DNA of 64,000 nucleotides from Utricularia gibba. Its lineage: Eukaryota; Plantae; Magnoliophyta. The stretch covers positions 930,001 to 994,000 of the forward strand of contig NEEC01000020.1 of the NCBI GenBank assembly GCA_002189035.1. The letters are read 5' to 3'. The notes below the pieces were generated by a model. That model was not told the DNA's origin. It saw only the letters and a list, made by a program, of their open reading frames with translations, and made no database searches. Position numbers and translations under genes: made by a program. Of the stretch, positions 25,883 through 62,086 are shown piece after piece. How positions within the stretch are numbered: position 1 is the first letter of the stretch; each line of letters starts with the position of its first letter.

Positions 25883-28800
25883 TTTGGGTTCCTTCTCTTT
25901 GTTAGTATCCTGTTCTTGTTTTAGTTCTTTCATTCTTGCTTATTGAAAAAAAAAAACGTTCAAGCCACGTCCTTCTTCGTACTTTCGGCTTTGGCCCAAA
26001 AAAAAGGGTGCGCATGAAGTTCATTGAGGAAGAGCTCAAAATTGAGTTTCAATTGAATAGCAAGAACATCTTGAATATCAACTTCAAGGGTGTAAAAAGA
26101 AAAGAAATGTAAAGATGAACATCCATCACCCATCATTATCATCCATTATTGCATATGTTTGTTTGTGACCTTTTTACTTTTCCCATTCCACCAAGCAACC
26201 ACTTTATTGTTGTTTTCCTTATCTTGAATCATCATGTGTTGTCATTTACCTGTTCCTACCATTCCATTTGACTATTCTCTTTGTTGATTGCTCATTCCTA
26301 TATTTCTACAATTTCACAAGCAACATATTTCGTGTGTAGTACTCATTCCTCTGATTTCATATGTTCTTACCTTGTTGTCCATCCCTCCTAGTTACTTACT
26401 ACAACAAGTAACCAACTTAATTCAACCAACCCTCCTTTGTCTCCATCTTGAGACAATTAACACTGCCACCCTCATCTAACCCCATCATAACACCATAATC
26501 AATACCAATCTGGAAGTGATTAATTCTTGAGGTGCCATGAGGTCAAGCATGATGATGATACGGAGTGCATCAAGGACTTGAAGTTTGAGGATTGAGTGGT
26601 AAACTTTGTGTGTGTTTCTTTTTTCTTTCACTTTATTCTTTTTTGCTGCTCGTTTCTTTTTGTCTTCTATTTAGAATGTCAAATTCAAGAAGTGAGCATG
26701 AAAAGGATGACTCACCAGATGAAAAGTTCACTTTGAGAGCTATGCAACAAGAATTTGCAAGATTGAATCGCATTCTGAAAAATATAAATGTTAGGCTGGA
26801 TGAACATGAAAACTCTCTACAAAATGTTGCAAGAGCCCAAGGACCAGATAATTACACTACTAGAAGGGATCGAGTTGTTCAAATGCCTCAACGCATCAAC
26901 ACTGAACATGATTTCAGTGATCAACGAAGTGCAAGGACTGTTGGAAGAAGAGATCGAATCCTGAATAGTGATGAAGAAGATGACTATCTTCAACATGGTG
27001 AATCTGATTTTTTACATGGGGATACAAGAAGATTTAGAGATCAAGGAGGTAGAAGAGAAGGGGAAGAAATGGAAAGGATGTTGATAATATCAAGATGAAG
27101 ATACCTCAATTTTAAGGAAAGAATGATCCAGACACATATCTCCGAAGAAAAGAAAATCAGATTGGCTTCCATGGAATTCAGTGATTATGCTGTAATTTGG
27201 TGGGATCAATTGGTGACTAAACGAAGGATTGAATCGGAAGAACCAATTCATACTTGGGCTGAGAGGAAAAGAGTCATGAGAAGGCGATTTGTTCCAAACC
27301 ATTACCAAAGAGATGTTTATCAATAGTTGCAGAATCTCAAGTAAGGCTCAAGGTCAGTGGAGGAATATTGGCAATAAATGAAGATCTTGATGATTAGAGC
27401 CAATGTTCATGAAGATAGTGAAGCAACTATGGCTAGGTTTCTTCATGGGATGAATAAGGAAATTGCAAATATTGTGGAGGTTCATCACTACATTGAGATG
27501 GAGAACATGATTCATATGGTCACAAAAGTTGAGAAACAACTCTCTAACAAGACGTTTGCTCGAGATTTCAACAAGAGGGATCCTGGTTTGAGATTTGGCG
27601 GCACCAAGGAGATGCTGGAGAGAAATAAAGGGAAGTCATCCATGGAAAACTTCAAATTCGACATTCCATCAAGTTCCAAGCAAGGGGAGCGAACAACACC
27701 TCCAAAGGACACTACAAGGAACATAAAATGTTTCAAATGCTTGGGGCATGGACATATTACTTCTGAATGTCCAAATAAACGAGCGATGGTGATTAGAGGC
27801 AATGAAGAAGTGATTAGTGAAGATGATGATGATTTCGTGGAGATAGAAACTGAATTGAGTGATGAGGATGAATTGCCTGTTTCTGGGGAAGTTTTAGTCA
27901 CTCGAAGGACACTTAATATTGGAGTGAAGGATAATGATGAGCAAAGGGAAAACTTGTTTCAAACATGGTACTTTTGTTAATAGGAAAGTTTGCAGCCTGA
28001 TTATTGATGGAGGTAGTTGCACTAATGTTGCCAACAATATCTTGGTGGAGAAATTGCGATTACCAACCGTGAGATATTCTAAGCCTTACAATTTATAGTG
28101 GTTTAATGAAGGAAGTGGGGTAAAGGTTACCAAACAAGCGCTCGTGGCGTTTTCTGTAGTAAGATATGAAGATGAAGTCCTATATGATGTTGTTCCTATG
28201 CATGCCAGTCACATTTTTGTTGGGAGGCCTTAGGAATATGATAAAAAGGCATTCCATGATGGCTTCAAGAACAAGTATTCCTTTGGCCATAATGGACGCT
28301 CCATCACACTTGCTCCATTATCTCCAAAGGAGGTACATGAAATCAAGTCAGAATCCTTGGTGATGCTAGAGCTTTGCATAGTGTTAATGGAAAGCACAAG
28401 GAGGTCGTACCTAAGGGAGAAGAGATGAGTGGAGAAGATCGAAAAGAGAGTGGAGTGAAAATGAATGAAAAAAAGATTCAAAAAAGTGGAGAGAAAAGAA
28501 AAGATGGGAAGGAATTGAGTGGAAAAAAGGGTGACAATGAGTGCAAAACAGAAAGTGGAAACATGAGAGTGTTAGAAATTGAGATAAATAATGAGAGTTT
28601 CTTAGCAAGCCCAAGTGAGATTAGACACTCACTTCATGCTAGGCAATCATTACTTCCACTTATATACGAGGATGAAATTCCTACTTTTCCTAACAACGCT
28701 CCACCTATTCCATCTTGTATTGTGTCTCTCTTACAGGTATATGAAGATGTATTTCCAGAAGAACTTCAAGGCTTACCTCCCCTCAGAGGGATTGAGCACC

Positions 28801-31246
28801 AAATTGACCTTGTGCCTGGAACACAACTCTCAAACCGACTAGCATACCAAGTCAATCAAGAGGAGACGAAGGAAATACAAAAGCAAGTTGAAGAATTGAT
28901 GTCTAAAGGATTTGTGTGTGAGAGCATGAGCCCTTGCTCTGTGTCGGTGTTATTGGTTCCTAAGTTTGATGGAACTTGACGGATGTGCACTGATTGTCGC
29001 GCCGTCAACAACATCACAATCAAGTATAGACATCCTATCCCTAAACTTGAAGATATGCTTGATGAATTGCATGGTGCTTGTGTTTTTAGTAAGATTCATT
29101 TGAGAAGTGAATATCATCAGATTAGAATGAAGTAAGGTGATGAGTGGAAAACCGCTTTTAAAACTAAGTTTGGTTTGTATGAATGAGTTGTTATGTCTTT
29201 TGGTTTTACTAATGCTCCTAACACCTTTATGAGATTGATGAATCACGTTCTTAGGCCTTTTATAGGTAGATTCGTAGTTGTTTATTTTGATAATATTCTG
29301 ATCTATAGCAAGAGTCTTGAGGAACATGTAGGGCATTTGAAGTATGTGTTAGATACTCTTAGAAAAGAGAAGTTGTTTGCTAATATCAAGAAGTGTGTCT
29401 TTTGTACGAATAGTGTCTCTTTTCTTGGATATATTGTAAATGATGCAGGAGTAGGTGTGGATGAAGAGAAAGTGAGAGCAATCAAAGAATGGTCAACACT
29501 TACATCAGCTGGTGAAGTTAGGAGTTTCCATAGCTTAGCAAGTTTCTATAGACGATTTATTAAGGATTTCAGGTCTATAGCAGCACCCCTCACTCAATTG
29601 ATCAAGAAAAATCATCTATTTCATTGGGGAGACAAGCAAGAACATGCCTTCAAACAACTCAAGGATAAGCTTTGCTCAACATCTCTCCTAGTGTTTCCAA
29701 ATTTTTCTGACACTTTTGAAATTGAATGTGACGCATCGGGTTTAGGCATTAGTGCTGTATTGATGCAAAATGGACGTCCACTTGCTTATTTTAGTGAGAA
29801 GCTTCATGGTGCCAACCTCAACTATCCAACGTATGACAAAGAGTTGTATGCATTGGTTAAAGTTTTGGAGACAGGGCAGCACTACTTGTGACCTAAGGAG
29901 TACACACTAATCATAGTCCCTCAAACATTTGAAGTGTCAAGGAAAGTTGAATAGAAGACATGCTAAGTAGGTGGAATTCATTGATACATTCCCATATGTG
30001 ATCAAATACTAAAAAGGTAAGGAGAATGTGGTAGCTGATGCTTTATCTAGAAGGTATACTCTTTTAGCTAATTTTGATGCAAGAATTCTAGGATTTGCTT
30101 CTATTATTGACTTATATGCTCATGATCACGATTTTGGAGACGTTTATAAGACATGCAAACTTGCTCCATCTGGAATATTCTTTAGGAAATATGGTTTTTT
30201 TTATAGGAAAGATAGATTGTGCATTCCTTGTTGTTCCATACATGATTTGATTGTTAAGGAAGCTCATGGGGGTGGATTAATGGGATATTTTGGTGTTAAA
30301 AAGACTTGATATTCTCACCCAACATTTATTTTAGCCATATATAAGAAGGGATGTTGAAAGAATTTATGATAGATGTATTTTTTGTTGGAAGGCTAAATCA
30401 ACCACTGCCCCTAATGGTTTGTATACTCTACTCCCTACTTCTTCCCAACCATGAGTGGACATTTTTATGGGCTTTGTTTTAGGCTTACCTCGTACCCAAA
30501 GGGATAGAGATTCAATTTTTGTTGTTGTGGACAGGTTTTTAAAGATAGCACACTTTATTCCTTGTCACAAAACTGATGGTGCATTTCATGTGGCTGATCT
30601 CTTCTTTTGGGAAGTCATTAGACTTCATGGTATGCCCCTCACTGTTGTCTCTGATCGAGATGCAAGATTTCTCAGTCACTTTTTGAGAGTTATTTGGAGT
30701 AAACTTGGCAGTAAGCTGTTGTACTTAACAACATATCATCCTCAAACAGATGGACAAACTGAGGTGACAAATTGCACACTTTCTACCTTAATTAGGATTA
30801 TGATTAAATCAAATCTTAAGACATGGGAGGAATGTTTGCCACTTTTTGAGTTCGCTTACAATAGAACCATGCATCTCACTACTAAATTATCTCCATTTGA
30901 AGTGGTTTATGTCTTTAATCCTCTTACATCTTTGGATATGTTACCTTTGTCTTGTAATGGAAAGTTAGTTTAGATGGCAAGAAAAAGGCTGAAGCAATTA
31001 GAAGATTGTATGAGAAGGTGAAACAACAGATTGAATCCAGTAATACAAAATATGCATCAATAGCAAATAGGGGGAGATGCAAAGTTGTATTTGAACCTTT
31101 CCAAGTTGTTGAGCGCGTGAATGATAATGCTTACAAGCTAGATTTACCAGGTGAGTATTCTGTTCATTCAATTTTCAATGTTGCTGATTTGTCTCTTTTC
31201 CAAATGGATACAGATTCAAGAACAAATCTTCCTAAAGAAGGGGGGA

Positions 31247-36044: not shown

Positions 36045-39000
36045 TCAGGCAGCACTCCCAGACATGCTCCCACAGGGCGTCTCATACACATCCCCAAACG
36101 GAGGATCGAAGTCTTCAGCTTCCAAGTCTTCCATGTAAAACGTTCTGGACAGGCCCCGTGAGCCCCTAAGATCGACAACATGGGAGCCTTCCTCTGAGCT
36201 CTGCTCCGATAGATCATCCAAACCATTCCAATGATGAGCTGCGTTCTTGCTATAGAATTCAGGAGGTTCGATGAAGCTCGCAAGCCGGTGGGATGCTGCG
36301 CCAGCGACGACGTTGGGTGGTTCTTGAAAGCTTGCTTGCTGATCATCCACTTCAGCCTGCGCACGAGCCCACCAGCGGTTCCTTGCAGCCATGGTGACAG
36401 CTTCATCGTGATGATGGAGGAGACTTTCCTGGAAAAGAGGGGCGGATGAAGAAGCTTGCAGGTTGCTGTTTATGCGGTCTGCCACAAGGTTGTCGTCCCA
36501 CATGTCCATGCGGCTCATGTCCCCTGGAATCCATGGATCTGCGGGGAGGTTCTCCTCATCAGCACCATCATGAAATCTCGGCGCAGCTGCTCCATCCATC
36601 TCTTGGTTATGGCAAGTGTAGAACCAGTCAAGAATGTAAGGGAAGTTCCTTTGCTGTCCATCTATCAGCCACAGCAGTTCCATTTGAGAGAAATCCCAAG
36701 TGTCCCTGCAACGTAAGTCTTGACCAAGAAAGCCATGCCGATTCGCTACTCCACCATGATATGGCATTGAGGGGAATGCTTTTCCGGTCATCATTCCATG
36801 GCCACGCAGTTTCTCGTCTCTAAAAGTTTTTAGAGTTGCCAGGAACCGCTTTCCATCTGGGTTAGGCTCCCACGAAGGATAGGCCAAATGGAAACTGCAC
36901 ACACAGTGGGGATAAAATGAAGAATGCCCAAAAAGAACGTTGTCTCATGAATACTGCACCTTAGAAAGGACTTCTCCAGTTTCCCTTGGGAACTCCTCCG
37001 GTCACGAGGAAGAGCAAAAGGTGAACCATATCTTTTGTTTCCATGGTTTCTAAAATCAAAGAGACTGAAACTGCAATGAAAAGCAGGATATGGGTATCAG
37101 AAAGAATTGGAATTGTAAGAATCAGTAAAAAAATTGAAGGCCTTGTGCATACCTACAAATGTCACCAACACCTTCAACGTTCACTGTAAAGTCAACAATG
37201 AACTGCAAAATTATGTCCACCCTCTGCAGCATAAAAAAGATGTGTAACACAGTTTCCAAGAGGGATATATAAACTGGATACGCTCAAAAATAAACCTTTG
37301 GAACAACAAAGATGAGCAGGTAAGGAGTGACAAATATTGAGGCCATCTCTTCCAACAGCATCATTCCAGTATACTGAACACTAGTAGTTTCCTTGTTAGT
37401 TAATTTCAAGTGACTAAAAATGTATAATATATATATATATACACACACACATCTAAGGTTTCAATAAGGGGAAAACAGTCTCCAACCTCATATCAAGTAA
37501 TGTGGAGTTGAAACTGAGATATACAAATCCATGTGTACAACTTGATTGGAAACTGAAAATCTTCCTGCGTACCTGGAAAAGAGTTTCAAACTCCTCCCTT
37601 ACGGTGTCGGTGTTCTCTCTTCTACGCCATCTTTTGGGCATAAAATGTGTATGTTGGACTACTTGTGACATCATTCCTTGAGGATCAAGAATCAGGAGTT
37701 CATCAGCCACTGCTGCCCGACTTATAGCTGTTATGGTACCAAAAACAGCTGCATACCAGAACAAGTTCCGCCCAAAAATCTGTCAGGTCAACCAGAACGC
37801 AAAAGGAAAGTGGGAAATGTCAGAACTACAAAGATCATATGCTTTTCAAACAAAAAAAGTAACAGAGTATTACATGGCCTTCCAGAAGAGATTCCTCAAG
37901 GAATGCAATGATAATAAGCACAGCAGCAAAGCCACCCGAGATAAATGAAATGAACTTTGCTACAATAGTCAAGATGGGCGAAGGAAACTGCTTTAGATAA
38001 TCAGAAGCATGCACAACACTGTTATTCATGCGGTGCTTGAATAGATGGTCAACCTGGGAAGATATTTCTCATGTTGGATCATAAGGAAGAATGAAAGTAT
38101 ATGAAAATTTGACATAGTCATAAAATGAATAGAGAAGGTATAGTAATTAGTCAGACTTTCACGCGAAGCACAATGTTACCCACCAACACACTCAGTCATC
38201 CAACTCAGGAAAATTGAACAACTTGTGCAAAAGAGAAATCTGCCTTGTGAAACAGGGTGGTAAATTCATGTAGATACCTCATTGAATTCCCTGAACATCC
38301 ATTTAGAAAGATTCGACCACCTACGGGAGGATGCCGTACTTGGATGATTATAGAATTGTTCAGCGTGCCTTAAAAAGAGGTACACGAGCATGAAAATAAC
38401 AAGAAAGGGTGACAGAAAAAAGAGAGCGATGCCAACTATCCTAAGTCTTATCCTTAATGCTCCTGGGTCAGAGACAAAGTCCCTTCGAATGAGAAAGTTC
38501 CTGTGAATGGATAGAAGAAGACACAAGTAGATCAACCAACATGCAGAAACAAAATGGAGAAACCGATGCATTGTTATGAAATTAAATGTTGCATTCATTA
38601 GAACATACCTGTCAAACATACTCTGTAGTATGCACCAATTCAATATCCATTCAAGGGTCTTTGGAAGTATTAGTCGTTCCTTAACACCATTTGGACCTCC
38701 ACTGTAGGTTATACCAGCAATAGGGAGCCATTTTGAAACAGGGAATGCAAGTGCTCCTTTGTGGAGCATGCCAATCAAGTAATTCTCCTTTCGCATCAGC
38801 CTCATCACCACATCCTGAAGAGAAAGGTCCTTGACGACACATAGCTGCTGCCTATGTTGTACTTGGACAACCTTTTCAAGGACCAATGACCATGGCAATG
38901 TCTGTAATTCACTGTCTGTTACACAGAGACTGCACAGTTGATGCCTATCAGCAACAATTATAGGAAGCCAAATGCAAAGAAATCTTGATAAAAGTTCATA

Positions 39001-39608
39001 CACAAATTTTGGGCAGCATTTCCATCATAGACATACCTCTTGTTATAGAACTGACGGATCTTAAGAGTTTCCTTCAACTGCGCAAAGAATCGAAAAAAGC
39101 AGAAGACCCAGTATATGGAAAATATCCCCAAATACCCAACAATTATAGCCTTCCCAACAGTAAAAGGAGCCATTGGATGCTGGCGTAAAGCCTCTTTAGA
39201 CAAATCACATGGTTTAATTCCAGATTCTACAGCATCCATCCCACATTTAGCATTTCTAAGCCCATTCCAGTCCACAAAGAGTAAGAAAAATCCAGAAAAG
39301 CATACAGTAAAGGCCAAGCTCAGAAGCTCAATTATCCACTTAATGATGATACACCAAAGGCCTCTGTCACAATAATAAAAATAAATTTTCTCAAAGAAAA
39401 GATCCAAATCGTCAATAGGTTCTGCATACAAAGTCTCCCCATCAAGAAGCCCGGAGGGGCTTTCACTCGGTGGGCTAGGTGGCTTATGGTAATCAGACAA
39501 TTCGATTTCATGGTGATAATCATCAAGAAGACCAGCACTTAAAGATGATTCAGTTTTAGGTTTCCATTGATTGAGAGCTTGAAAAAACTTTTCCCCACTG
39601 AACATCAC
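36045..39608 (-). CDS. ATG9: Autophagy-related protein 9 (about 9 coding exons)
   Basis: IDDLDLFFEKIYFYYCDRGLWCII, DVVMRLMRKENYLIGML, LPKTLEWILNWCI, HPSTASSRRWSNLSKWMFREFNE, VHASDYLKQFP, LFWYAAVFG, HTHFMPKRWR, LLEEMASIF.TPYLL and GKLEKSFLSF..AYPSWEP, on GT-AG exons. Confidence 0.96.
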
Positions 39609-41976: not shown

Positions 41977-43230
41977 TTACTTCACTGTTTTGTAAACTGA
42001 AAGCGCTGAATGGTCTCTGCGAACACTCTTCCTCTGGTAGTTAGTGACGAAGTCCAAAAACCCAACTTGTCGATACAGCGCAGGATGATCTTCAGAAAGA
42101 AGCTCCTCGATGGGTCCATGGGGCCTCGTTGATGTCTCACCACTTGGGAGAAAGAAGCATGCCACTGATAACCGAGTTCCGCTGTGTCTGGACAGTACTC
42201 TGTGCTCCACGCTTTTGAATCTGTCATTTGAAATAAGCTGCAAAAAGCAGTGGTTCCAAGCGATGTGAGTGGGAGTAAATGAAATGGGGTAGAAACCAGT
42301 TCCAGTTCTTGAGCTCCCACCTGCATATAATCGCCAATGTTTGCTATTAAAGCGCCAGGAACGGGTGGAACATCGATCCAATTGTCATCATGAAGGATTT
42401 GGAGTCCACCCACGTTGTCCTGTAGCAGGATGTTGAGGACTGTGGGATCAGAATGCTCGACTGCACTGAGGGTGCGATCCGGCTCGGGGCAGGGGGGATA
42501 GTATAGGCATGTTAGATATGAGCTTTTCATGCATTGCATCTGCTCCAGGAAACTTGGGGCCAGCCCCAGAGCCTCAGAGAGCATCTCTGATACAACATCT
42601 CTCAGTTTCAATATGTGATTCATGTAATCTGTGATTTCTTTCCTGGGGAAAGATGTTATAACTAGAAACAGGCAATGGAAATGAGATGAGAGGATTAGCA
42701 ATTCAAATATACCTGCAGTCAAGGGGGATTTCATCAGGGATTACTTCATTGTCTGTAAAAGAACACGCTAAAGCATCCCTCCAGTTTGCTACATCGTGTC
42801 TGGTCAGCTTCCCATTGATAGTATAAAGCCTCACTCTGCGTCTACTATCCGAGGAGTAGAAGTCCATTTTTTGTTCCTTCGGTTGTTCATGAAATCTCTC
42901 TGTGGCTTTTAATATGGAGTCCATTACAGTCACAGGAACTCCATGGTTAACCATCTGGAAGAACCCCCATGACCCTGATGCTTTACGAATCTCAGCAACG
43001 ATCTCCATCCGTCGGGTAAGATCTTCAACACCTTCAAAATCTATCACTGGGATACGAATTTGGGATGCACCAGCACTACTGACTTCCAGTGATGGGAAAA
43101 TGAAGAATCTGGGAACTTTTTTAATCTGAGAATCCGAAAGCCCTTTGACTCCGGCCTTTGTTTTCTCAAACTCCTCCACTTCTTTATCCCAATCATGATC
43201 ATCGATTTCATGGTCAGAAGTGGCCGCCAT
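41977..43230 (-). CDS. 2-oxoglutarate/Fe(II) dioxygenase, ACC-oxidase-homolog (E8-like) type, 366 aa
   Basis: Exons 43230-42713, 42642-42321 and 42237-41977 join in frame. Motifs KAGVKGL, IPVIDFEG, WGFFQMVNHGVP, NWRDAL, YYPPCPEPD, HSD, VEHRV and RLSVACF. Confidence 0.93.
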
Positions 43231-44043
43231 TGACACCTACGAAACTTAACACCCATTGAATGAACTACATAACTATAATTCAGTTTCAGACAATAACCAG
43301 ACCAAACCTTTACTTCGGCCAGATTCAGATTCACCAACAAGAACATGATCAATGAGACCAGAAATCATATACTTCAAAAATCTAACCGCTAAAAAACTCA
43401 CAAAAGAGGGTTATGGAACATGATAGTACCTTTTCTCCGGACGAACTCCACTCGGGGTCTGGATCAAAAGATGAAGACTTGATGTGGATAGACAAGCCTG
43501 GCAGCATGATTCATACCCAGAAAAAGTGATTTTTGAGGTAAAAACAAAAGAAAAAAGTGAAGCAGGTGAGGATCAATACATAAGACTCCTGTCTCCTCTG
43601 ACACCGAAGAGCATCGTCGATAATCGCGTCTCAAGATGTTTGGCATCATTTTCCCAGATTCGCAGGTCACGTGATTGCTGAGATATTTTTACCCCCTCTC
43701 AAAAATTAATTGATTAGTGAAATAACTATATTCTGTAATTTTTTTTTTATCAAAATTGACTTTTATATACTTATTTGCTAAATACTACTAATTTTTATTT
43801 ATGTTATATATAATATGGTATTTTACACAATAAAATAGCTAATTATATCCATAATTTTTATAATTAAAATATAATTTTAAATTTATGTAAAAGTTATATT
43901 CAATAAAATATTAAAAACAGTATATCTTTCTTAATAGTAATTTAAAATAATTTTAATTTTACAAAAAAATATAATTTTTCAACCATCAAATTTAAAGAAC
44001 AAAATATGATCAATTAAATTATGAACATGTTTTATATATGATA

Positions 44044-53406: not shown

Positions 53407-53851
53407 ATTTGCGCCCTATCAAATACTCCTATCATTAATAGGAAATTATGATATTAATTAAAATAAACAGGCAGGACCGGCGCCGGTTCAATATGCAACT
53501 TTTAGCGCGTAAATGAATTTCGAATATAATAATAATAATAATAATAAAATAATAGCGCATCCCCGGCGTACTCGTACGGTAAACTAAACTTGCCGCGTTG
53601 AAGTGGCCCAGCGTTAAAATATTTATTTAATATGCGGAAATTGAATTTTTAAATAGCAGAAAGTCAGCCAGTGGGAATGAATCCCCAGAGATGGAATGCT
53701 GAATGCCAAGTCGCCCAAAATAGCGAGTGTTTCCAGTCACCAACTACTGAGGGAATACACGCAGATTGAAAAATTCAATGGTCCTCTTGGTATAAAAGCG
53801 CACATCATCCCCACCTTTCCCCCATTCAAATCTCTCAATTCTTCCAATACA

Positions 53852-54169
53852 ATGGCGTTCCAGAGAGTTCTCTTTTGCGTCCTTTTCCTTCTAGCAGCAT
53901 GCGAAGCTTCTAGAGTTCTCAAACAGGAGCAGCAAGGTTTATCCTCGTCGCCCACCGGAGCCCTCCTTCTGTTGCCATCTCTGCAAGCAAGGCCGAGCAG
54001 GCCGGGCGGCCCTCCGTCGCCCAGCGGATGCACGTGGATCCCGGGGCGCGGTGGCCGGCCGTGTGCGAACACGCTCGGGCAGAGGAACTTCGCGGCGGTC
54101 GCTCCCCAGGCTCCTCCGCCGTCCGGCAAGGTCACGGTGGTGCAGTTCGGGAAGGCTAGCGAAAGCTGA
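53852..54169 (+). CDS. Secreted CTNIP/SCREW-family peptide precursor (105 aa)
   Basis: TATAAAAG at 53791 and ATG at 53852. Signal peptide MAFQRVLFCVLFLLAACEA, then LLLLPSLQ...GGPPSPSGCTWIPGRGGRPC (C-x10-C) and an NFAAV..APPP tail. GC-rich coding island. Confidence 0.85.
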   Translation: MAFQRVLFCVLFLLAACEASRVLKQEQQGLSSSPTGALLLLPSLQARPSRPGGPPSPSGCTWIPGRGGRPCANTLGQRNFAAVAPQAPPPSGKVTVVQFGKASES

Positions 54170-55559
54170 TGTGAGCAAACGACTCGGCTGATGAATAACT
54201 TAACTCATTCTTTTCAACTCATTCCTGTGTGATGCGCCGGGTGTTGAGTTGTACGTGAAAGTGTAAACCTTCTGATTAGGTCAAGTCTAATATTCTTTTA
54301 GATATTCAAAAAATTATATATTGATTATGTTAAAAAATCAGTATCTTATCAATGTTTTAAAATTTACTCGATCATGAAACAAAATAATAGTTTTCATTTT
54401 TAGAATAACGTTTCAAAAATAGCTAAATTATCATACACAAGTTATTTATATGCCAAAAATAATCAAACAAACCCTTCGTTTTTGTAAGAAGTTGTAGACC
54501 CTCGAGTTTTTCTTTATAAAAAACACTTCTTAAACTTGATTTTCTAAGTCATCAATACAATATTTAACATGATAGAATGGAATATAGTAAACTATCATTT
54601 ATTTAAATTAAATCTTTTACATAAAAAAATTGATATTCGATTAATATACTATACATTCTTTTATTCCATATAAAGAGTCATGCCTTATTTACAATATGGC
54701 TTATGTTCCCAAAAAAAGCAACGAAAATAAATTATTCTAATTAGATAGTATTTCTCCCAAAAAGACGGACCTTTTCATCTTTTGTCACTTAGTATTTGGT
54801 TGATGAGATTGGGTGGGAGATAATAAATTATAGGATGTTGACTTTATAAGTTTAAATAAATCTAGGATTAAATGAGTTTTTTTATTAATTTTATGTATAT
54901 CAATTTATTTAAAAATGTATTTCTATTTACTTTATTTAATCACTTAATCTCAGCTCAAACTTCACAAGTAAAGACTATTTGAAAAACTAATTTCTCTATA
55001 TCATCTTTATTTAAATTCATAGAAATTAAACCCTTTTTATTCTATTTACATCAACCAAACACAAGTTTAATATAAATTAGTATCATTTGGCCACACTCAC
55101 CGACATTCGCCCAACACATTACTCTTAGTTGTATATAACTAAAGTAAGTTCCACACTAGCAAATTGTAAACCCAACACAAGAATTCGAATGAGTTGTATT
55201 TCATGCATTAAACTCAAAACCCCACTTTTTGACGCAAGATTTGTGCTTGGAGCTTGGAAGAACTTTAGTTAGGAAATCTGCAGTGGTCTTCAGTTTTGAT
55301 TTTCTGTCGAATCCAATGGGCATGAATATCAACATGTTTCATCAAAGAGTGTAAAAATGTATTCTTGTTATGTGATATTGTTAAAATATATAATCTCAGA
55401 TCGAAAAATTGAAGTGGTATAATCAAGTATATTAGAAATTGTAAATCATAAGTTATCGATTGGGTTTAATTTTTTCTATTATAATCTATGTTTTTTGTGT
55501 ATTTGACCTTCATGTGTGCTCACTCGACCCATCGGATCTTGAATTTCAACATATATAGC

Positions 55560-55830
55560 TCTAATGATATCACTAAAAATGATTGTCTTCAAATCAGCTC
55601 CTTCCAGTTCGTCCATTAGATGATCAATTCAATCCATATTGCATGTTTTACGCTTTCAGAGAAAGCAACATATTCTACCTTTGTGGATGAGAGAACTACT
55701 CCCTTTTGAAGCCTAAAGTACTACATTATTGCACCAAATCTAAGGATTGAAATTACATAAGTAGTTGATTTCTTAGTGTCTGGGTGACCAATGAGATTTG
55801 CATCTACATACATTCTTGGTTGCAAGTCAC
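55560..55830 (-). mobile_element. Ty1/Copia RT-RNase H relic
   Basis: MYVDANLIGHPDTKKSTTYVI and VVLSSTKVEYVAFSESVKHAIWI match the Copia GYxDAD...RKSTTGY and VALSTTEAEY...AIW motifs. Confidence 0.75.
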
Positions 55831-57614
55831 TGTTTTCAAATTGTAAGATCAATGATTTAGAACCTTGCAGATTAAATTTATACCTGCACAGTTTTCTTTC
55901 TTGTACAATTGTAACTCATGTTGTGGACAAGTCCTTCATTTTATGGAATTTATTTGTCCCATATCGGTTTGTTACTTACATTTTTTAAGCATCCATTTAA
56001 TGAAGGTGCTTCACATGTTAGGCATTAGTCTCAGGCACATGATACCTCTATTCACCTTTAACTATCAACACTTATTAGTACATTAACAAGTACATTTGTA
56101 AGAATACTTTACTAAAATGGTCCTTTCATAATGGAAAATGCTCAAGAGAAGCAACAATAGTTGATGGGATTGAGATTGACTTATATTATGGGCTAATTAA
56201 TATTAATCATTGTGTGACATGGGCTAATAATCATTGTAAAATGCCAAACTTAGCATCACCCATGAAATGTCGAAATTTTTTGAATTTTTTAGTTTATGGT
56301 TTTGGTGTTCTTAGGAGAAGGAAAAAATGTAGAAATTTAATTACCTAAAAACTTGAAAACGCATTGAGCATCAGGGGTTTTTTGAGTGCTCATGTGTTCG
56401 AGATTTTTGCTATTCAATGCTTATTTAGTGTTTGATAAATAGTGTTTCAATAGGCTTCTTGAAAACTCAATGAGCATAGGGTCCACATAGATGGTCATGT
56501 TGAGCTCTACAATAGTGCTTCTAGCTAGGGGCTTCATGTCCATCATATGAGCAATCACTCTATTTGTTGCTATTTGGGCATTGGGGCATAAATTTGTACA
56601 TGGGTGCTTACTATTAAGAGTTAGGAGCTTAGTGTTGCATCTCTTAGAAAGTTACTATTGAGTCTGAGATAATGCAACCACATGGCTAACGAGATTTTTG
56701 GGGCTCTCGACATATGCAATGCTCCTATTTTAACAGGTATTTAGCCCAAATCATGTCTCCTTGGATGGAAACCTACTTCTTAAGTCCTTGCTTTTCGACA
56801 TGGAAGATTCATCACCATAGATCGTACTTTAGTTTTCTCTACAAAGTGATATTTTCTCAAATACTTGGAGTGTAGTTTTTGTATGACTTATTTTACAACT
56901 TATGATTTAAAATAAAAGTAAATGTTTATAAAATATCTTTACTTGTTATAAAACTTATCTTATACTTATATTTTTATTTATTCTTAATTTATTTCAATTT
57001 TAACTACTTTATCTATTTATTACATAAGTTGATAAAATGTGAATTATTTAATAAATAAATTGTTTAATTTCAAATAAATCACTTCTATTTATTTTACATT
57101 TACTTATACAATAACTTTTACTTATGAATTAAATAGAAGTTGTTGCTTAAATTGCATAAACTACACCTTTCATGTTCGAATCTTTTTCATGGAAACATCT
57201 TCCATGATGGTTCTAGTCAAAGTCTTGTGTTCAATGGTTTGAATATTATTCTCGTTTTTCTCATTTTTTGTACAAAAGTAATTGTGAATTTAGTTAAAAA
57301 TTAATTATTCATGTAAAAAAAATCAAATATAATTTTCCATCCTAAAAATCACTCTTCCACCAATCATTAGTGCAGTGCACACTAAGTGATGCATTATTTG
57401 CTTGAGGTTTTTTTAGGAATGATCTTTTTCGCAGTCCCTTTTTCCCTCTCTTCAGCGTCTTTCACATTGGGCGTAGCAGTGCTCAGTTCTCCTCATGTGA
57501 ATAGAAGGAGTTCTATCGCTCAAATCAATCGAAGAACCCTACTTCGCATGAGTTCAAACATTGTTCTCTAGCTCCTCATAACTATTTCTCCTATGGTGCT
57601 ACCAATACTTAAGT

Positions 57615-57811
57615 AGTGTTCTGAAAAATTTTTAAAATCTATTTCTATTTTTCAAAAGTAAAAATAATTTTTTTATAATACTTTTAATTATAAAAATAAT
57701 TCTATCAAAAACATTTTTAAAATTATAACTATAAAAGTTATTTTTGAAAAAGTAATAAATTCGTTTTTATTTTTATTTTTCAAAAATAATTTTGAATTTT
57801 CCAAAATATTG
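57615..57811. mobile_element. Second copy of the 51219-51455 MITE family, in the opposite orientation
   Basis: gtgttctgaaaaatttttaaaatctatttctatttttcaaaagtaaaaata aligns with the reverse complement of the 51455 end. It ends aattttccaaaatattg. Confidence 0.6.
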
Positions 57812-59001
57812 TTTTAACTGTTCTCAAGTACCTTCACTTAACTGCTTTCAAGCATTTATCTTGTTTGAGTGGGTTTTCCATTGGTGGATTTGTGTCCCTT
57901 GGGTAATATACGTGGGTACTAGTTTTTATTTCTCCATAGAGTAGTCATGCAGCGATGTATCAATATATGAGCATTTTTATATGCGAATTTAGCTATCCAG
58001 CAACATTCATATTATAATTTAATTAACATTATTGCCATGCATTTCACCAATCTAATAAAAACCCAGTACTTGTTACATAAGCACTCACTTGAATGATCAG
58101 CAGTTGCCATCATAGGGTAAGCTTGGATGTCATTGTCTACAGATTAGGGTCCTGTGTTTGAGAACATGAGGCATTCAAATTCTCCACCAAAACAGTAACA
58201 ATATGTCGCTTGGGTTGAAACTTGCTGCACCTTCAAAACACTTAGTTCATTTCTTTTTTACTCACAAATTTTAAAATTGATAAGTGACTAAATTAGCGAT
58301 TAAATTGAATTTCCTAGTTCTTCTATTTAATTTGATATATCTGTTTATCAGGATCAAGTCAATAAGAAAGCAAATATCCTTCAATAATTTTCAAAAGAGT
58401 ATGATTATAATCAAAGTAAAAATTAATGAAAAAATCAAATATCCTTGGATTACAATCATTTGACACCATACTCAATCAAAATCTAATTTTTAATCCAAAA
58501 ACAAATGAAATTAGCCATTCAAACTGGATCCTACCCGTTTAACTTTTTCAAGCGTCGGGTCAGTCAGATGTGACGTGGACCCTCGCTACCAAGTTGAGTT
58601 GAAGCACGGCGCAAATTTGGGGCGGGTGGGTAGTTATGAAGACACATCCATACATTTATAGTCTGTTAATGACTAATCAGGTGGTCGCCCCCGGCTGGCT
58701 GTATTATCATGACCTGAACTCGGTTTTCCTATGCGTCCACCGGTTCAATCAACCATAGAGCAAGCAACCTCCCAAACTTCCATTATTCAAAAAGTTTGAT
58801 ACTAGTATATTAGTATGTTTAACTATAGATATAATTAATTATATATAATGCTTGATATTAGAGAATATAAATTTGAGTATATGAATAATATAAATATAAT
58901 TAATATTCTATTCATTTGTATATATTATCTATATTCAAAAATATGTATATAAACTATATATCTATACAAAGCTGACATACATATATTAGTTAGTTAAATA
59001 A

Positions 59002-59003
<2 letters not shown>

Positions 59004-59032
<29 letters not shown>
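59004..59032. repeat. (AT)n microsatellite, about 14 units
   Basis: Read directly from the sequence. Confidence 0.9.
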
Positions 59033-59036
<4 letters not shown>

Positions 59037-61507
59037 TAGGTATAAATCATCAATACCCAAGTATTAAACATGCGCTAAGGATGGTTACTATACGGATCTA
59101 AAATTAAATATATTTATAATGTTAATTCTATAATATATATTTATCCAAATATACGTAATTCAAAAATATTCATAATTAAACTATATTATCAAACATCATA
59201 TCAAATGTAATCTTAAATGCTAGTAGATAATCCATTTATTCATATGCGTCACCAATTATAAAATTCATTCTAAAATTTTACTGTTATTATTATTATTATT
59301 ATGTTAATATAAACAACTTAAAGCCTATTGAACTGTTTGAGGCACTTTGAATCTTCTTTTTATAGCAAACACAAAAATATATTTTTACGACATAAAATTT
59401 GATTTACTTTTATCAAATATATTTAAGCTTCTATATTTATTCTGCATGCATATACACAATCATTTTTGTTATATTGAATGTGATTTTTAGCAGTTTTATG
59501 AATATTGATAAGTAGTACCTATGTTTTTATATTTTTATAACTATTTTGAATTATTTCATATTTCTTTTATGTATATGTTTCTATATTTTTAAATATTTTA
59601 TATTAATATGATCTTTTTGAAATAAAATTAACTTTTATAATTTTTAGAATAATTTTGATTTAAATTAAAAGAAAGTCATGGCTTAAGATGAATGAGTCTA
59701 TTTAAGATCGATATTGAACTAGAAGAAAGTTCAAAGATGAAAATTTGATCAAAAATTTTATGATTTAGATAAAAATTTTAAAAATAATTTTGAAAAATTA
59801 AGATGGATGATAGATAAAAAAAACTTAAATATAGATCCAAAAAGAAAAAAATTAAGTCTGAAGTCTGATCACCATGCTTTTGTAAAGTCTGAAGTCTTCG
59901 AATCATTCAGAAGTAATATAGTCAAGTCTTGATTTCCAAATTTTCATTTGTTTTCAATTTTTAGTAATTTTTGTGTCCTAAAGTAAACCATGTGCGCGTA
60001 AACATTTATGGTTAAGGATTCTCATTGAAACTATGATTATGCAAGTCCTTACACATGTTGATGATTTACTATGTTTTTTATATTTAATTTCATTTTACAA
60101 AAATGTTTTTCTTGTCAATATGCTTTTAATTATCACCAAATCCTAAGACCATATGAAAAAAAAAATCAATTGTATATTGTTGTCAAAACACATTTGATCT
60201 AATATATCTACTAGTATGTAAATTCTTTGGGTTAGAATCAAATGTTAGAAAAATATAAGTTATCGTAAAAGACGAAATGATTCTAGTGAAGTAATTAATT
60301 CTATATTTTTACTAAATGAGAAATAATGGTATTATAATTAACAAGTATCACTTATTTAGAATAATATTCTTAAAATTTTTGTGAACGAGTAAATGTTTGA
60401 GAATCACATACACATATGAACAAGCATTTTGAGCATCAAAAAGTCATCGTATGACGGCCTTCCATGTCCGGAGGGTGTGGGTTGGTCAGAATGGTTTGTT
60501 GTCACTTCTACCTTTGAAGTCAATATTTTTATATAATTTCAAAATTATATTTTTATTTTTTATCATTTATTTTAGGAAAAATTCAAAATATCAATTCTTA
60601 GTGAAAACAATTTTTATTTTTTGTTTTAATTTTTTATGCGCAATTACAAAATTACTATCAAAATATTCATATACATTCATATCTGAAAAAAATGATTCAA
60701 TGGGCATTAGTCATAAAACCTAGTAGTCACATACTAAGTAACTAACTTTTTGAAATTATATTGCAATAACACCTAAATTTGATAAATCAAAAACACTATG
60801 TTATATAACAAGTGTTTTATTTGATAAATCAACTAAATTCGTGGACGTAAAATTCTGATCCCGGGATTCGTAAATTTTATTTACAAATAAATAACCTAAT
60901 AAAAAATTGAACATATTGTAAACTTTATTATACAAATAAATATAAAGTGACTTCTTTATCATTCATTATAAGAAAAATGAATAAGCGAATAAAAATTGAA
61001 CATATTGTACACAATTACATGTAATCGAGTTAAATAATTGATTTATATAAAAAAATTAACAAAAAACGAATTATAGATTAATTAATCTCATAAATCAAAA
61101 CTCCAAAGCTATATATTTTAACTATTCTACAAAAAGGAAGAAAAAAAAATCACTTAACGGCTCAAAGGTTTTGAAAGTGACCCGACCCATAAAGTATTGG
61201 GTTGAAATTTCAACTGGCAGAGATTATTCAACTGTTTAATTGTAAAACTTACCTCACTGGTTCGGTTTCGCTGATGCAAAGCTACTAAAATCAAAAACCA
61301 ACCACAGAAAATTCATTCAACTCTTTGAAAAATCCGTCACCAGCATGCTTCCGCATCCCGGAGTCTCTTTGAATAATACCAGTCAAATTCGGACCTCCAT
61401 AGCGTGCACATTGCATTCCTGGAGCAGTATAAAAGCGCACGCACCGGAGATCCCAGTTCCATGCACAAATCTATCTCTCTTTCATTGCTTGCTTGACCCA
61501 GAAGAGG

Positions 61508-61771
61508 ATGATGAGGAGGAGGAGTTCCATTGCTGCTGTTTCCATTTTCGTTCTGCTGGTTGCTCTCAGTGCTGATACGAATGAAGCCATACGTCTCCTG
61601 CCGGAGGAATTCGCGAAACAAGCGAATCTGCTTCTACCGTCGTTGCAGAGTAAGCCGCCGTCACCGAACCCTTGCACCTACATTCCGGGGAGTGGTTCCG
61701 GTGTATGCATGAAAGTGGCAGGTGTAGACTCTCCTTCACCTGACCTGAAACTGAAAGAGGGTGGCGTGTGA
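61508..61771 (+). CDS. Secreted CTNIP/SCREW-family peptide precursor (87 aa)
   Basis: W-box at 61381, TATAAAAG at 61428 and ATG at 61508. Signal peptide MMRRRSSIAAVSIFVLLVALSADTNEA, then NLLLPSLQSKPPSPNPCTYIPGSGSGVC (C-x10-C). Confidence 0.85.
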   Translation: MMRRRSSIAAVSIFVLLVALSADTNEAIRLLPEEFAKQANLLLPSLQSKPPSPNPCTYIPGSGSGVCMKVAGVDSPSPDLKLKEGGV

Positions 61772-62086
61772 TCATACCCTGAGCACGAACTTTAGGAACT
61801 GATTCAGATTCTTTTGTTATTTGTATAGTTTAGAGACAGATGTTCATTCGTTCATTCCTTGAATGGTGGTTCAGATAAAAACTGAGCACATTATGAAATT
61901 CATTCGTATTTTGCCATGTAAAACGCAATACAAATCTCGGCTGGGAAGTACTTATTCTGTGAAGGAACTCCAGTTCAGTCGGTCTGGATTCTACATAGTT
62001 CATGAGATCACAATCAACACGGAATATATTGCAGTAAAATCCTAGAATTGGGTCATGAATGCATATAGTGATAGAGGTAGGCCCGG

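What the first reader, a model, noticed from the sequence alone, without database searches (positions are those of the whole stretch)
53852..61771. Two divergent CTNIP/SCREW-type phytocytokine genes, one with a CTWIP variant
Seen: two intronless ORFs (53852-54169 and 61508-61771), 7.6 kb apart on the same strand. Each has a signal peptide, a shared LLLPSLQ motif, PPSP, and a C-x10-C loop (CTWIPGRGGRPC and CTYIPGSGSGVC). Known: CTNIP/SCREW peptides are disulfide-looped stress peptides sensed by the LRR-RLK HSL3/NUT. Inference: this is an old tandem pair that has diverged. The Trp in the name-giving motif and the Arg-rich loop of copy 1, plus the very different C-terminal tails, could change receptor specificity. 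Genes this small are often left unannotated, so this is the best candidate in the window for an undescribed signalling module in this species.
Basis: partly seen in the sequence, partly recalled or inferred. Interest (0 to 1): 0.75.

Follow-up and report, generated by a model that had tools for sequence, protein, structure and literature searches.

The report
Tandem CTNIP/SCREW peptide genes, ordinary
Two small neighbouring plant genes encode secreted, disulfide-looped signalling-peptide precursors of the known CTNIP/SCREW family; the same Trp-type/Tyr-type gene pair was already catalogued in sesame in 2022, so this is an ordinary, probably unannotated, addition to a known family.

Summary
Two intact intronless ORFs lie on the + strand, at 53852-54169 (105 aa) and 61508-61771 (87 aa). 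Each has a hydrophobic leader, LLLPSLQ, PPSP and a C-x10-C loop (CTWIPGRGGRPC, CTYIPGSGSGVC). Each is a GC island in AT-rich DNA and has the same 14-nt TATA element upstream.

Family assignment to CTNIP/SCREW is supported. An HMM built from 52 relatives outside the first, Lamiales-centred hit list scores the two ORFs at E 1.3e-19 and 3e-14. The next of 673 window segments scores E 1.1. The close relatives P0004 and P0011 read the same as two Sesamum indicum entries in the published "confident" CTNIP alignment (Rhodes 2022).

The novelty claims do not hold:
- CTWIP is the commonest form among Lamiales relatives.
- C-x10-C is the dominant spacing in the relatives collected (90 of 111).
- An adjacent CTYIP/CTWIP pair is already in the published sesame set.
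- SCREW2 N60W, which makes CTWIP, keeps binding to Arabidopsis NUT.
- Medicago's active MtCTNIP has CTFIP and C-x10-C.

Both genes sit on long branches but keep the conserved core. ORF2 has lost the conserved C-terminal tail. Receptor, processing and expression are untested. Verdict: new members of a known kind, low interest.

The parts
53790..53803 (+). TATA-box element GTATAAAAGCGCAC of gene 1, 5' end 62 bp upstream of the ATG
   Evidence: An identical 14-mer lies upstream of both genes. It occurs only twice in the window, and 0 of 100 shuffles give 2 matches. The upstream in-frame ATG at 53696 lies before this element, so 53852 is the likely start.
53852..54169 (+). Gene 1 CDS: 105-aa W-type (CTWIP) long-form CTNIP/SCREW precursor, with no intron in the CDS
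   Evidence: Translation. HMM from 52 relatives: E 1.3e-19, 65.7 bits. 49% identical to Sesamum alatum P0001. GC 0.64, GC3 0.70.
53852..53908 (+). Gene 1 signal peptide, about residues 1-19, with likely cleavage after the family-conserved E-A
   Evidence: Hydropathy 3.21 over residues 6-16 and the -3/-1 rule at CEA|SR. E18, A19 and R21 are invariant in alignment A1. This is a heuristic, not SignalP.
53984..54064 (+). Gene 1 predicted bioactive core, Gln45 to Cys71: SLQ anchor, Pro/Ser-rich linker and the disulfide loop CTWIPGRGGRPC
   Evidence: It aligns to CTNIP4(46-70), the high-affinity HSL3 ligand (PMC13585564). The Gln-to-Cys distance is 15, against a family mode of 12.
54065..54166 (+). 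Gene 1 C-terminal tail. It keeps the QRNFA, PPP and VVQFGxAS motifs and lacks the AYPxQ block
   Evidence: HMM alignment to tail positions. Missing columns are listed.
61427..61440 (+). TATA-box element GTATAAAAGCGCAC of gene 2, 5' end 81 bp upstream of the ATG
   Evidence: and the sequence.
61508..61771 (+). Gene 2 CDS: 87-aa Y-type (CTYIP) CTNIP/SCREW precursor with a truncated tail
   Evidence: Translation. HMM E 3e-14, 48.3 bits. 43% identical to Salat_0495600, E 6e-17. Clade support 98/94.
61508..61573 (+). Gene 2 signal peptide, about residues 1-22. The family-conserved E-A at residues 26-27 is an alternative cleavage point
   Evidence: Three Arg in the n-region, hydropathy 3.16 over residues 8-18, and candidate sites after residues 19, 21 and 22.
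61646..61708 (+). Gene 2 predicted bioactive core, Gln47 to Cys67: SLQ anchor, short KPPSPNP linker and the loop CTYIPGSGSGVC
   Evidence: The Gln-to-Cys distance is 9, shared with its clade, for example Salat_0495600 (P0024) and the E. guttata protein P0026.
61772..61795 (+). In-frame relic of the ancestral tail after the gene 2 stop codon (reads SYPEHEL, then a stop). It corresponds to the family AYPEQ motif
   Evidence: Frame-0 translation downstream of Cys67, compared with the tails of P0024 and P0026.

Best explanation
These are two paralogous, intronless genes for small secreted precursors of CTNIP/SCREW phytocytokines. Both belong to the widespread long-form subgroup with a C-x10-C loop and a C-terminal tail, the form seen in AtCTNIP5 and MtCTNIP. 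They form an old tandem pair, with one W-type (CTWIP) and one Y-type (CTYIP) gene, that several Lamiales families share.

Shown here: intact ORFs, leader-like N-termini, two Cys ten residues apart, the conserved Ile-Pro-Gly, the SLQ anchor, a profile match, and a core that is conserved despite long branches.

Inferred from published work on CTNIP4/SCREW2 and MtCTNIP:
1. The leader sends the precursor into the secretory pathway.
2. The two Cys form an intramolecular disulfide.
3. The precursor is trimmed to a peptide starting near the SLQ glutamine.
4. The linear Pro/Ser-rich part lies in the groove of an HSL3/NUT-clade LRR receptor kinase.
5. The Ile-Pro of the loop sits in the receptor's hydrophobic pocket.
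6. The loop face that carries the W or Y bridges to a SERK co-receptor and starts Ca2+/MAPK stress signalling.

Gene 2 has lost the conserved tail through a premature stop. It now resembles the short Brassicaceae CTNIP1-4 format.
For: - Sequence and motifs.
- Gene-like features: a shared TATA 14-mer, GC islands and leader heuristics.
- Homologues: Lamiales hypothetical proteins at E down to 1e-38, extending to Gentianales, Asterales, Vitis, Fagales, Fabales and Ranunculales.
- Profile test: an HMM of 52 relatives outside the first hit list gives E 1.3e-19 and 3e-14, with the next window segment at E 1.1.
- Link to the published family: P0004 and P0011 (48-49% identical to ORF1) read the same as two Sesamum indicum entries in Rhodes 2022 CTNIP_confident.align. 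That alignment also holds all five Arabidopsis CTNIPs.
- Family filter: two Cys 9-11 residues apart, met here with 10.
- A validated analogue: MtCTNIP has CTFIPGSGGTHC plus a tail and activates MtHSL3.
- Constraint: ORF1 matches 32 of 35 columns that are at least 80% conserved but only 6 of 24 variable ones (p 3e-8). ORF2 matches 24 of 30 against 2 of 17 (p 8e-7).
- Tandem age: ORF2 sits in a 98/94 clade with Salat_0495600, and W/Y neighbours occur in S. alatum and S. indicum.
- Mechanistic template: PMC13585564 and PMC13261660.
Against: - There is no expression, processing or receptor evidence for these two genes.
- The local Pfam copy gives no hit. The model PF27884, which is precomputed on some relatives, is absent from that copy.
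- The AtCTNIP5 23-mer, which has the same C-x10-C and tail format, was inactive in Arabidopsis.
- Both genes have terminal branches of about 1.0-1.1 against a median of 0.17.
- The residue after the anchor Gln is Ala (ORF1) or Ser (ORF2), not the Arg that matters in CTNIP4. The anchor-to-loop distances are 15 and 9, not 12.
- ORF2 has lost the tail motifs, has Ser for a 97%-conserved loop Gly, and has Val in place of the usual Pro (or other polar residue) just before Cys2.
- The HMM training set was itself retrieved with a profile that included the two ORFs, so the test is not fully independent.
- The PDB sequence search found no CTNIP chain.
Confidence: 0.85

Rival explanations
1. One or both genes are decaying relics (pseudogenes in the making) that are no longer expressed or active. 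ORF2 is the more likely case.
For: Both have very long terminal branches, 1.02 and 1.12 against a median of 0.17. ORF2 has a premature stop ahead of an in-frame AYPEQ-like relic and has lost the NFA and FG tail motifs. It also has Ser for the 97%-conserved loop Gly and Pro for the Gly before Cys1. Both genes have lost the 92%-conserved prodomain Trp.
Against: Both ORFs are uninterrupted from leader to loop, and both keep the TATA element. Substitutions avoid the conserved columns (p 3e-8 and 8e-7), which neutral decay would not produce. Tail-less members occur elsewhere, including the active Arabidopsis CTNIP1-4 and P0002 and P0016. The long branches may reflect a fast-evolving lineage.
Confidence: 0.1
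2. They are true family members, but their receptor is not the HSL3/NUT orthologue. It could be the sister NUT-like (NUTL) clade or another subfamily-XI LRR-RK, so the mode of action differs from CTNIP4.
For: The AtCTNIP5 peptide, of the same format, was inactive in Arabidopsis, and Arabidopsis lacks NUTL. Most dicots keep NUTL, which has a diverged ligand pocket (PMC13261660). A longer N-terminal part and a larger loop make the monocot DEP2 incompatible with NUT. Here the loop is one residue longer than in CTNIP4 and the linkers are 15 and 9 residues rather than 12.
Against: MtCTNIP has the same C-x10-C loop, an aromatic residue at the N position and a tail, and it activates MtHSL3. The AtCTNIP5 peptide that was tested lacked the Gln-Lys anchor, which was later shown to be worth about 200-fold in affinity for CTNIP4, so its inactivity says little. 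Ile-Pro, which distinguishes NUT-type ligands, is kept.
Confidence: 0.15
3. They are chance ORFs, or members of a different small-peptide family such as IDA/IDL or PIP that only look like CTNIPs.
For: The local Pfam copy gives no hit. The Pro/Ser-rich linker resembles the PVPxSGPN/S motif that CTNIPs share with IDA/IDL.
Against: The profile E-values are 1e-19 and 3e-14, against 1.1 for the best other segment. IDA and PIP peptides have no Cys pair, whereas here the CTxIPG...C loop is invariant. The closest relatives are in the published CTNIP set.
Confidence: 0.01

Closest known systems
Sesamum indicum CTNIP candidates on NC_026150.1 in Rhodes et al. 2022, eLife e74687, Supplementary file 10: regions 23595689-23597206 (CTYIP type), 23597323-23598852 (CTWIP type, = P0011) and 2273579-2275057 (CTWIP type, = P0004)
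   Same: Same order of plants. The architecture matches: leader, EA|xR, an acidic prodomain, LLLPSLQ, PPSPNG, CT[WY]IPGxGGxxC and the tail. The W-type/Y-type neighbour arrangement is also the same.
   Different: Identity is only about 43-49%. ORF1 has a 2-3-residue longer linker (ARPSRPGGPPSPSG), an extra Arg in the loop, and lacks the AYPxQ block. ORF2 lacks most of the tail. The window genes are 7.3 kb apart, whereas the sesame regions abut.
Medicago truncatula MtCTNIP (Medtr1g044470), an experimentally active ligand of MtHSL3
   Same: It has a C-x10-C loop, an aromatic residue at the N position (CTFIPGSGGTHC), and sequence continuing past Cys2. It has Ser, like ORF1, rather than Asn two residues before Cys1.
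   Different: Its linker is the eudicot consensus KGPVxPSGPSG, with a Gln/Lys-to-Cys distance of 12. Perception is species-specific: AtHSL3 does not respond to it. The window peptides were not tested.
Arabidopsis CTNIP4/SCREW2 (AT2G31345) with HSL3/NUT and BAK1 (PDB 9T26; the cryo-EM ternary complex)
   Same: It has a signal peptide, the LQ anchor, a Ser-containing linker, C-T-x-I-P and a Gly-rich loop closed by a second Cys.
   Different: CTNIP4 has Asn at position 60, a C-x9-C loop, Arg after the anchor Gln, and ends two residues after Cys2. The window genes have W or Y, C-x10-C, Ala or Ser after Gln, and a tail of 34 or 20 residues.
Arabidopsis CTNIP5 (AT3G23123)
   Same: It is the long form: CTHIPGGHGPPC (C-x10-C, with Pro before Cys2 as in ORF1) followed by an ERHFAG tail motif like ORF1's QRNFA.
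   Different: It has His at the variable position. Its 23-mer was inactive in Arabidopsis assays.

Membership tests
CTNIP/SCREW phytocytokine precursors | Small precursor (under 150 aa) with an N-terminal signal peptide | tested here: met
   105 and 87 aa. Each has a basic n-region, an 11-residue stretch with hydropathy above 3.1, small residues at -3/-1, and no second hydrophobic segment. This is a heuristic only, since SignalP was not available.
CTNIP/SCREW phytocytokine precursors | Two conserved Cys 9-11 residues apart near the C-terminal part (the filter used by Rhodes 2022) | tested here: met
   Both have C-x10-C: Cys60-Cys71 and Cys56-Cys67. There are exactly two Cys in each mature part. 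The filter is quoted.
CTNIP/SCREW phytocytokine precursors | C-T-N-I-P motif, of which Ile61 and Pro62 are the functionally critical and conserved residues | tested here: met
   C, T, I and P are present in both, and Asn is replaced by Trp or Tyr. The published confident alignment itself holds 55 CTNIP, 18 CTYIP and 2 CTWIP strings. I61Y costs about 120-fold in binding, while Asn60 changes do not hurt binding much.
CTNIP/SCREW phytocytokine precursors | N-terminal anchor (Gln46-Arg47 of CTNIP4) and a PVPxSGPN/S-like linker with the conserved Ser | tested here: inconclusive
   The Gln of SLQ and a Ser within PPSP are present in both. The next residue is Ala or Ser instead of Arg, and the Gln-to-Cys distance is 15 or 9 rather than 12.
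CTNIP/SCREW phytocytokine precursors | Significant profile match to family members | tested here: met
   An HMM of 52 relatives gives E 1.3e-19 and 3e-14 among 673 window segments, with the next at E 1.1. The close relatives P0004 and P0011 read the same as published confident CTNIPs.
CTNIP/SCREW phytocytokine precursors | Pfam family membership (PF27884 is precomputed on some relatives) | tested here: inconclusive
   The local Pfam copy returns nothing for the ORFs, or for relatives that carry PF27884.1 in the precomputed table. The model is therefore absent from the copy. No paper mentions the accession.
CTNIP/SCREW phytocytokine precursors | Perception by HSL3/NUT with SERK/BAK1 recruitment, dependent on the disulfide | not testable with these tools
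   This needs binding and signalling assays. There is no HSL3-like gene in the window: the only LRR gene (11847-13196) has no kinase domain.
CTNIP/SCREW phytocytokine precursors | Induction by elicitors or stress | not testable with these tools

The most novel reading that the evidence does not exclude
The W-type/Y-type tandem pair, which is conserved across Lamiales, could be sub-functionalised. The two types differ systematically in anchor-to-loop linker length (12-15 against 9 residues) and in the aromatic residue on the co-receptor-facing side of the loop. They might therefore be read by different receptors, NUT and the NUT-like clade that Arabidopsis lacks, or might recruit SERKs differently. 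The conserved tail (NFAG...AYPxxMVQFGVA), which ORF2 has lost, might carry a separate function such as a second peptide or control of processing.
Probability: 0.1. Interest if true: 0.5.

Novelty: new member of a known kind. Interest (0 to 1): 0.15.

Why it matters
This adds two probably unannotated CTNIP/SCREW genes to the catalogue for a divergent Lamiales genome. It also shows that the W-type/Y-type neighbour pair predates the split of several Lamiales families. It does not reveal a new signalling module.

Its practical value is for annotation, since Rhodes 2022 reported that over 40% of CTNIPs were unannotated. It also provides natural sequence variants for studying how HSL3/NUT-type receptors co-evolve with their ligands: a linker of 15 or 9 residues, Trp or Tyr at the Asn60 position, and a tail-less copy.

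Tried and rejected
- Pfam scan of both ORFs at E up to 10 gave nothing. Nine relatives also gave nothing relevant, which showed that PF27884 is missing from the local copy and is not a true negative.
- PDB sequence search gave no CTNIP chain, only chance hits at E of 0.1 or worse. The peptide chain is short, so this says little.
I therefore had no genomic context for relatives and no direct check of annotation. Synteny rests on locus-tag order and on the published coordinates.
- MAFFT alignment of the two upstream regions was uninformative. Only the 14-mer TATA element is shared.
- I searched for a third copy or fragments by regex, tblastn with seven family members, and HMM. None was found.
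- A repeat scan of 52-63.5 kb found only AT-rich low-complexity matches and no transposon boundary that would explain the 7.3-kb spacer.
- I checked whether the LRR gene at 11.8 kb could be the receptor. It has no kinase domain and is not HSL3.
- The tree could not say whether ORF1 is orthologous to the tandem W-type (P0008, P0011) or the dispersed W-type (P0001, P0004), because that node is open.
- Not run: the large representative search (costly, and the family was already settled) and structure prediction (uninformative for a short, mostly disordered peptide).
- Not run: a direct HMM or BLAST against Arabidopsis CTNIP1-5 and MtCTNIP. Those sequences were seen only as text in papers and had no reference id, so I left that step out rather than type them in.


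Full report
**1. The observation**

ORF1 (53852-54169, +) gives 105 aa and ORF2 (61508-61771, +) gives 87 aa. Both have a hydrophobic N-terminus, LLLPSLQ, PPSP and a C-x10-C loop. The loops are CTWIPGRGGRPC (Cys60-Cys71) and CTYIPGSGSGVC (Cys56-Cys67).

A six-frame scan finds these two C-[TS]-x-[IVL]-P..C loops. It also finds one looser C-x-x-I-P..C match on the minus strand at 53761-53802, which fails the C-[TS] pattern and which no family search supports. tblastn with seven family members and an HMM find no third copy.

The two proteins are 40% identical (E 5e-10). At the DNA level nothing is shared except a 14-mer, so the duplication is old.

**2. Are they genes?**

Several features say yes:
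- Each ORF is a GC island, 0.64 and 0.53 GC with GC3 of 0.70 and 0.53. The surrounding DNA is 0.16-0.35 GC and the window mean is 0.35.
- The 5' end of the identical element GTATAAAAGCGCAC lies 62 bp (ORF1) and 81 bp (ORF2) upstream of the ATG. It occurs only at these two places in the window, and 0 of 100 shuffles reach two matches.
- For ORF1, the longer 157-aa reading starts upstream of this TATA box, so 53852 is the likely start.
- Each leader has a basic n-region, an 11-residue core with hydropathy above 3.1, and small residues at -3/-1. No later hydrophobic segment follows, and each mature part has exactly two Cys. SignalP was not available, so this is a heuristic.

**3. Family**

The local Pfam copy is silent. 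The word-indexed protein search first found two Lamiales hypothetical proteins. With alignments as queries it then found 55 and 120 proteins. Most are annotated "hypothetical protein", "uncharacterized protein" or "transmembrane protein", apart from a few evident mis-annotations.

The hits run from Lamiales (Sesamum, Phtheirospermum, Paulownia, Erythranthe, Buddleja, Olea, Fraxinus, Perilla, Dorcoceras) to Gentianales, Asterales, Solanales, Vitis, Fagales, Fabales, Malvales and Ranunculales.

Some relatives carry a precomputed PF27884.1 label. The local Pfam copy does not hit those relatives either, so the model is missing from the copy. No paper mentions the accession.

The link to CTNIP/SCREW comes from the literature:
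- Rhodes et al. 2022 (PMC9191895) defined the family. They filtered candidates for two Cys 9-11 residues apart and released a "confident" alignment.
- That file holds all five Arabidopsis CTNIPs and four Sesamum indicum entries. It contains the strings CTNIP 55 times, CTYIP 18 times and CTWIP twice.
- The two CTWIP entries read the same as P0004 and P0011, which are 48-49% identical to ORF1.

As a formal profile test I built an HMM from 52 relatives that were not in the first, Lamiales-centred hit list. I searched it against all 673 stop-to-stop segments of at least 40 aa in the window. ORF1 scores E 1.3e-19 (65.7 bits) and ORF2 scores E 3e-14 (48.3 bits). The next segment scores E 1.1.

One caveat applies. 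The training sequences were retrieved with a profile that contained the two ORFs. I did not score the ORFs directly against Arabidopsis CTNIP1-5 or MtCTNIP, because these were seen only as text in papers and had no reference id.

**4. What kind of CTNIP**

| Feature | Count among the collected relatives |
|---|---|
| C-x10-C spacing | 90 of 111 |
| CTYIP motif | 46 |
| CTWIP motif | 16 |
| CTNIP motif | 11 |
| Gln-to-Cys distance of 12 (modal) | 54 |

In the first, Lamiales-centred hit list, CTWIP is the commonest form (15 of 55). Most members continue past Cys2 into a conserved tail (NFAG, a Pro run, AYPxxMVQFGVA). AtCTNIP5 (CTHIPGGHGPPC followed by ERHFAG...) and Medicago MtCTNIP (CTFIPGSGGTHC followed by PIEERN...) have this format.

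The loop length, the aromatic residue and the tail are therefore the common condition of a widespread subgroup. They are not peculiarities of this locus.

What is individual to the window genes:
- ORF1 has a Gln-to-Cys distance of 15.
- ORF2 has a distance of 9, which it shares with its clade.
- ORF1 has an extra Arg in the loop. Melia and Stephania relatives also have this.
- ORF1 has lost the AYPxQ block.
- ORF2 has a premature stop followed by an in-frame relic that reads SYPEHEL, so its tail is truncated.

**5. Age of the pair**

In a maximum-likelihood tree of 51 rows, ORF2 falls in a 98/94-supported clade of seven. That clade includes Sesamum alatum Salat_0495600, an Erythranthe guttata protein and several Logan contigs. 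ORF1 lies in the 97/91 lamiid clade but is unresolved within it.

The W-type Salat_0495500 and the Y-type Salat_0495600 have consecutive locus tags on one contig. In the published sesame set, the CTYIP-type region NC_026150.1:23595689-23597206 abuts the CTWIP-type region 23597323-23598852.

The W/Y tandem therefore predates the divergence of these Lamiales lineages.

**6. Constraint or decay**

Both terminal branches are long, 1.02 and 1.12 against a median of 0.17. The substitutions nevertheless avoid the conserved positions:

| Gene | Matches in columns at least 80% conserved | Matches in variable columns | p |
|---|---|---|---|
| ORF1 | 32 of 35 | 6 of 24 | 3e-8 |
| ORF2 | 24 of 30 | 2 of 17 | 8e-7 |

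That pattern indicates purifying selection on the leader end, the SLQ anchor and the loop. ORF2's misses are concentrated in the tail, plus a Ser for a 97%-conserved loop Gly.

A fast-evolving lineage could explain the long branches. I put the chance that ORF2 is non-functional at about 10-20%.

**7. Mechanism (inferred)**

Three recent structural studies show how CTNIP4/SCREW2 works:
- The Gln46-Arg47 anchor and the Ser-containing linker lie in the HSL3/NUT groove.
- The Cys58-Cys68 disulfide shapes a loop whose Ile61-Pro62 fill a hydrophobic pocket.
- The loop bridges to SERK/BAK1.

The window peptides keep Gln, Ser, Cys, Thr, Ile, Pro, the Gly-rich loop and Cys. I therefore propose the same sequence of events: secretion, disulfide formation, trimming near SLQ, binding to an HSL3/NUT-clade receptor, and SERK recruitment.

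- SCREW2 N60W, which creates CTWIP, was the one Trp substitution that did not lower binding to NUT.
- Asn60 mutations have no dramatic effect on HSL3 binding, but N60A/F reduce SERK recruitment.
- Perception is lineage-specific: MtHSL3 responds only to MtCTNIP.

Co-evolved specificity is therefore plausible, but it is neither new nor peculiar to this locus.

One rival deserves a test. Most dicots keep a NUT-like sister receptor with a diverged pocket, and Arabidopsis lacks it. The AtCTNIP5 peptide was inactive in Arabidopsis. However, the peptide tested lacked the anchor residues, so that result says little.

**8. Surroundings**

The window also holds:
- a secreted LRR-only gene at 11.8-13.2 kb, which has no kinase and is not HSL3;
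- retroelement pieces at 26.5-31 kb;
- ATG9 exons at 36-39.6 kb;
- a 2OG-Fe(II) oxygenase at 42-43.2 kb.

The 7.3-kb spacer between the two peptide genes is AT-rich low-complexity DNA with no recognisable element.

**9. Annotation status**

Neither protein, nor anything at least 90% identical, appeared in the 5.8-billion-cluster collection when I searched with the proteins themselves. Rhodes 2022 reported that over 40% of CTNIPs were unannotated.

**10. Verdict**

The genes are new members of a known kind. Interest is low.

Noticed in passing
window 11847-13196 (+): An intronless gene of about 449 aa for a secreted LRR-only protein with a hydrophobic C-terminus (possibly a GPI or membrane anchor). 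It has no kinase domain, so it is not the HSL3 receptor.
   Followed up: partly
window 26592-30973 (+): A run of ORFs with a zinc knuckle, reverse transcriptase and RNase H domains. These look like pieces of an LTR retroelement broken by stops or frameshifts.
   Followed up: partly
window 36045-39608 (-) and 41982-43236 (-): Exons of an ATG9 autophagy gene, and a 2OG-Fe(II) oxygenase gene (DIOX_N plus 2OG-FeII_Oxy).
   Followed up: partly
relatives P0047, P0050, P0053, P0055 (Capsicum, Solanum): Solanaceae relatives have lost both cysteines. They repeat the LLLPSLQ...P.P.PNPG module two to four times in one precursor, which looks like a cysteine-free, multi-copy derivative of the CTNIP-like precursor.
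   Followed up: no
relatives P0090, P0099, P0106, P0110, P0128, P0130 (Asteraceae): Asteraceae members carry CSNTGNGGNxC (C-x9-C) without the Ile-Pro that is critical in CTNIP4.
   Followed up: no
window 53939-53941 (ORF1 residue 30) and the ORF2 prodomain: Both window genes have lost the Trp of the prodomain motif EEExxWMK, which is 92% conserved among lamiid relatives.
   Followed up: partly
window 61461-61496 (+): A possible 11-codon upstream ORF (ATG at 61461) sits between the TATA element and the ORF2 start codon. Whether it is transcribed depends on the true transcription start.
   Followed up: no
same genome, other pieces (notes s1-236240, s1-191008): First-stage notes report further CTNIP/SCREW-like loci in this genome: a two-module precursor, and a pair with a 23-residue Cys-Cys loop. 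I did not check them.
   Followed up: no
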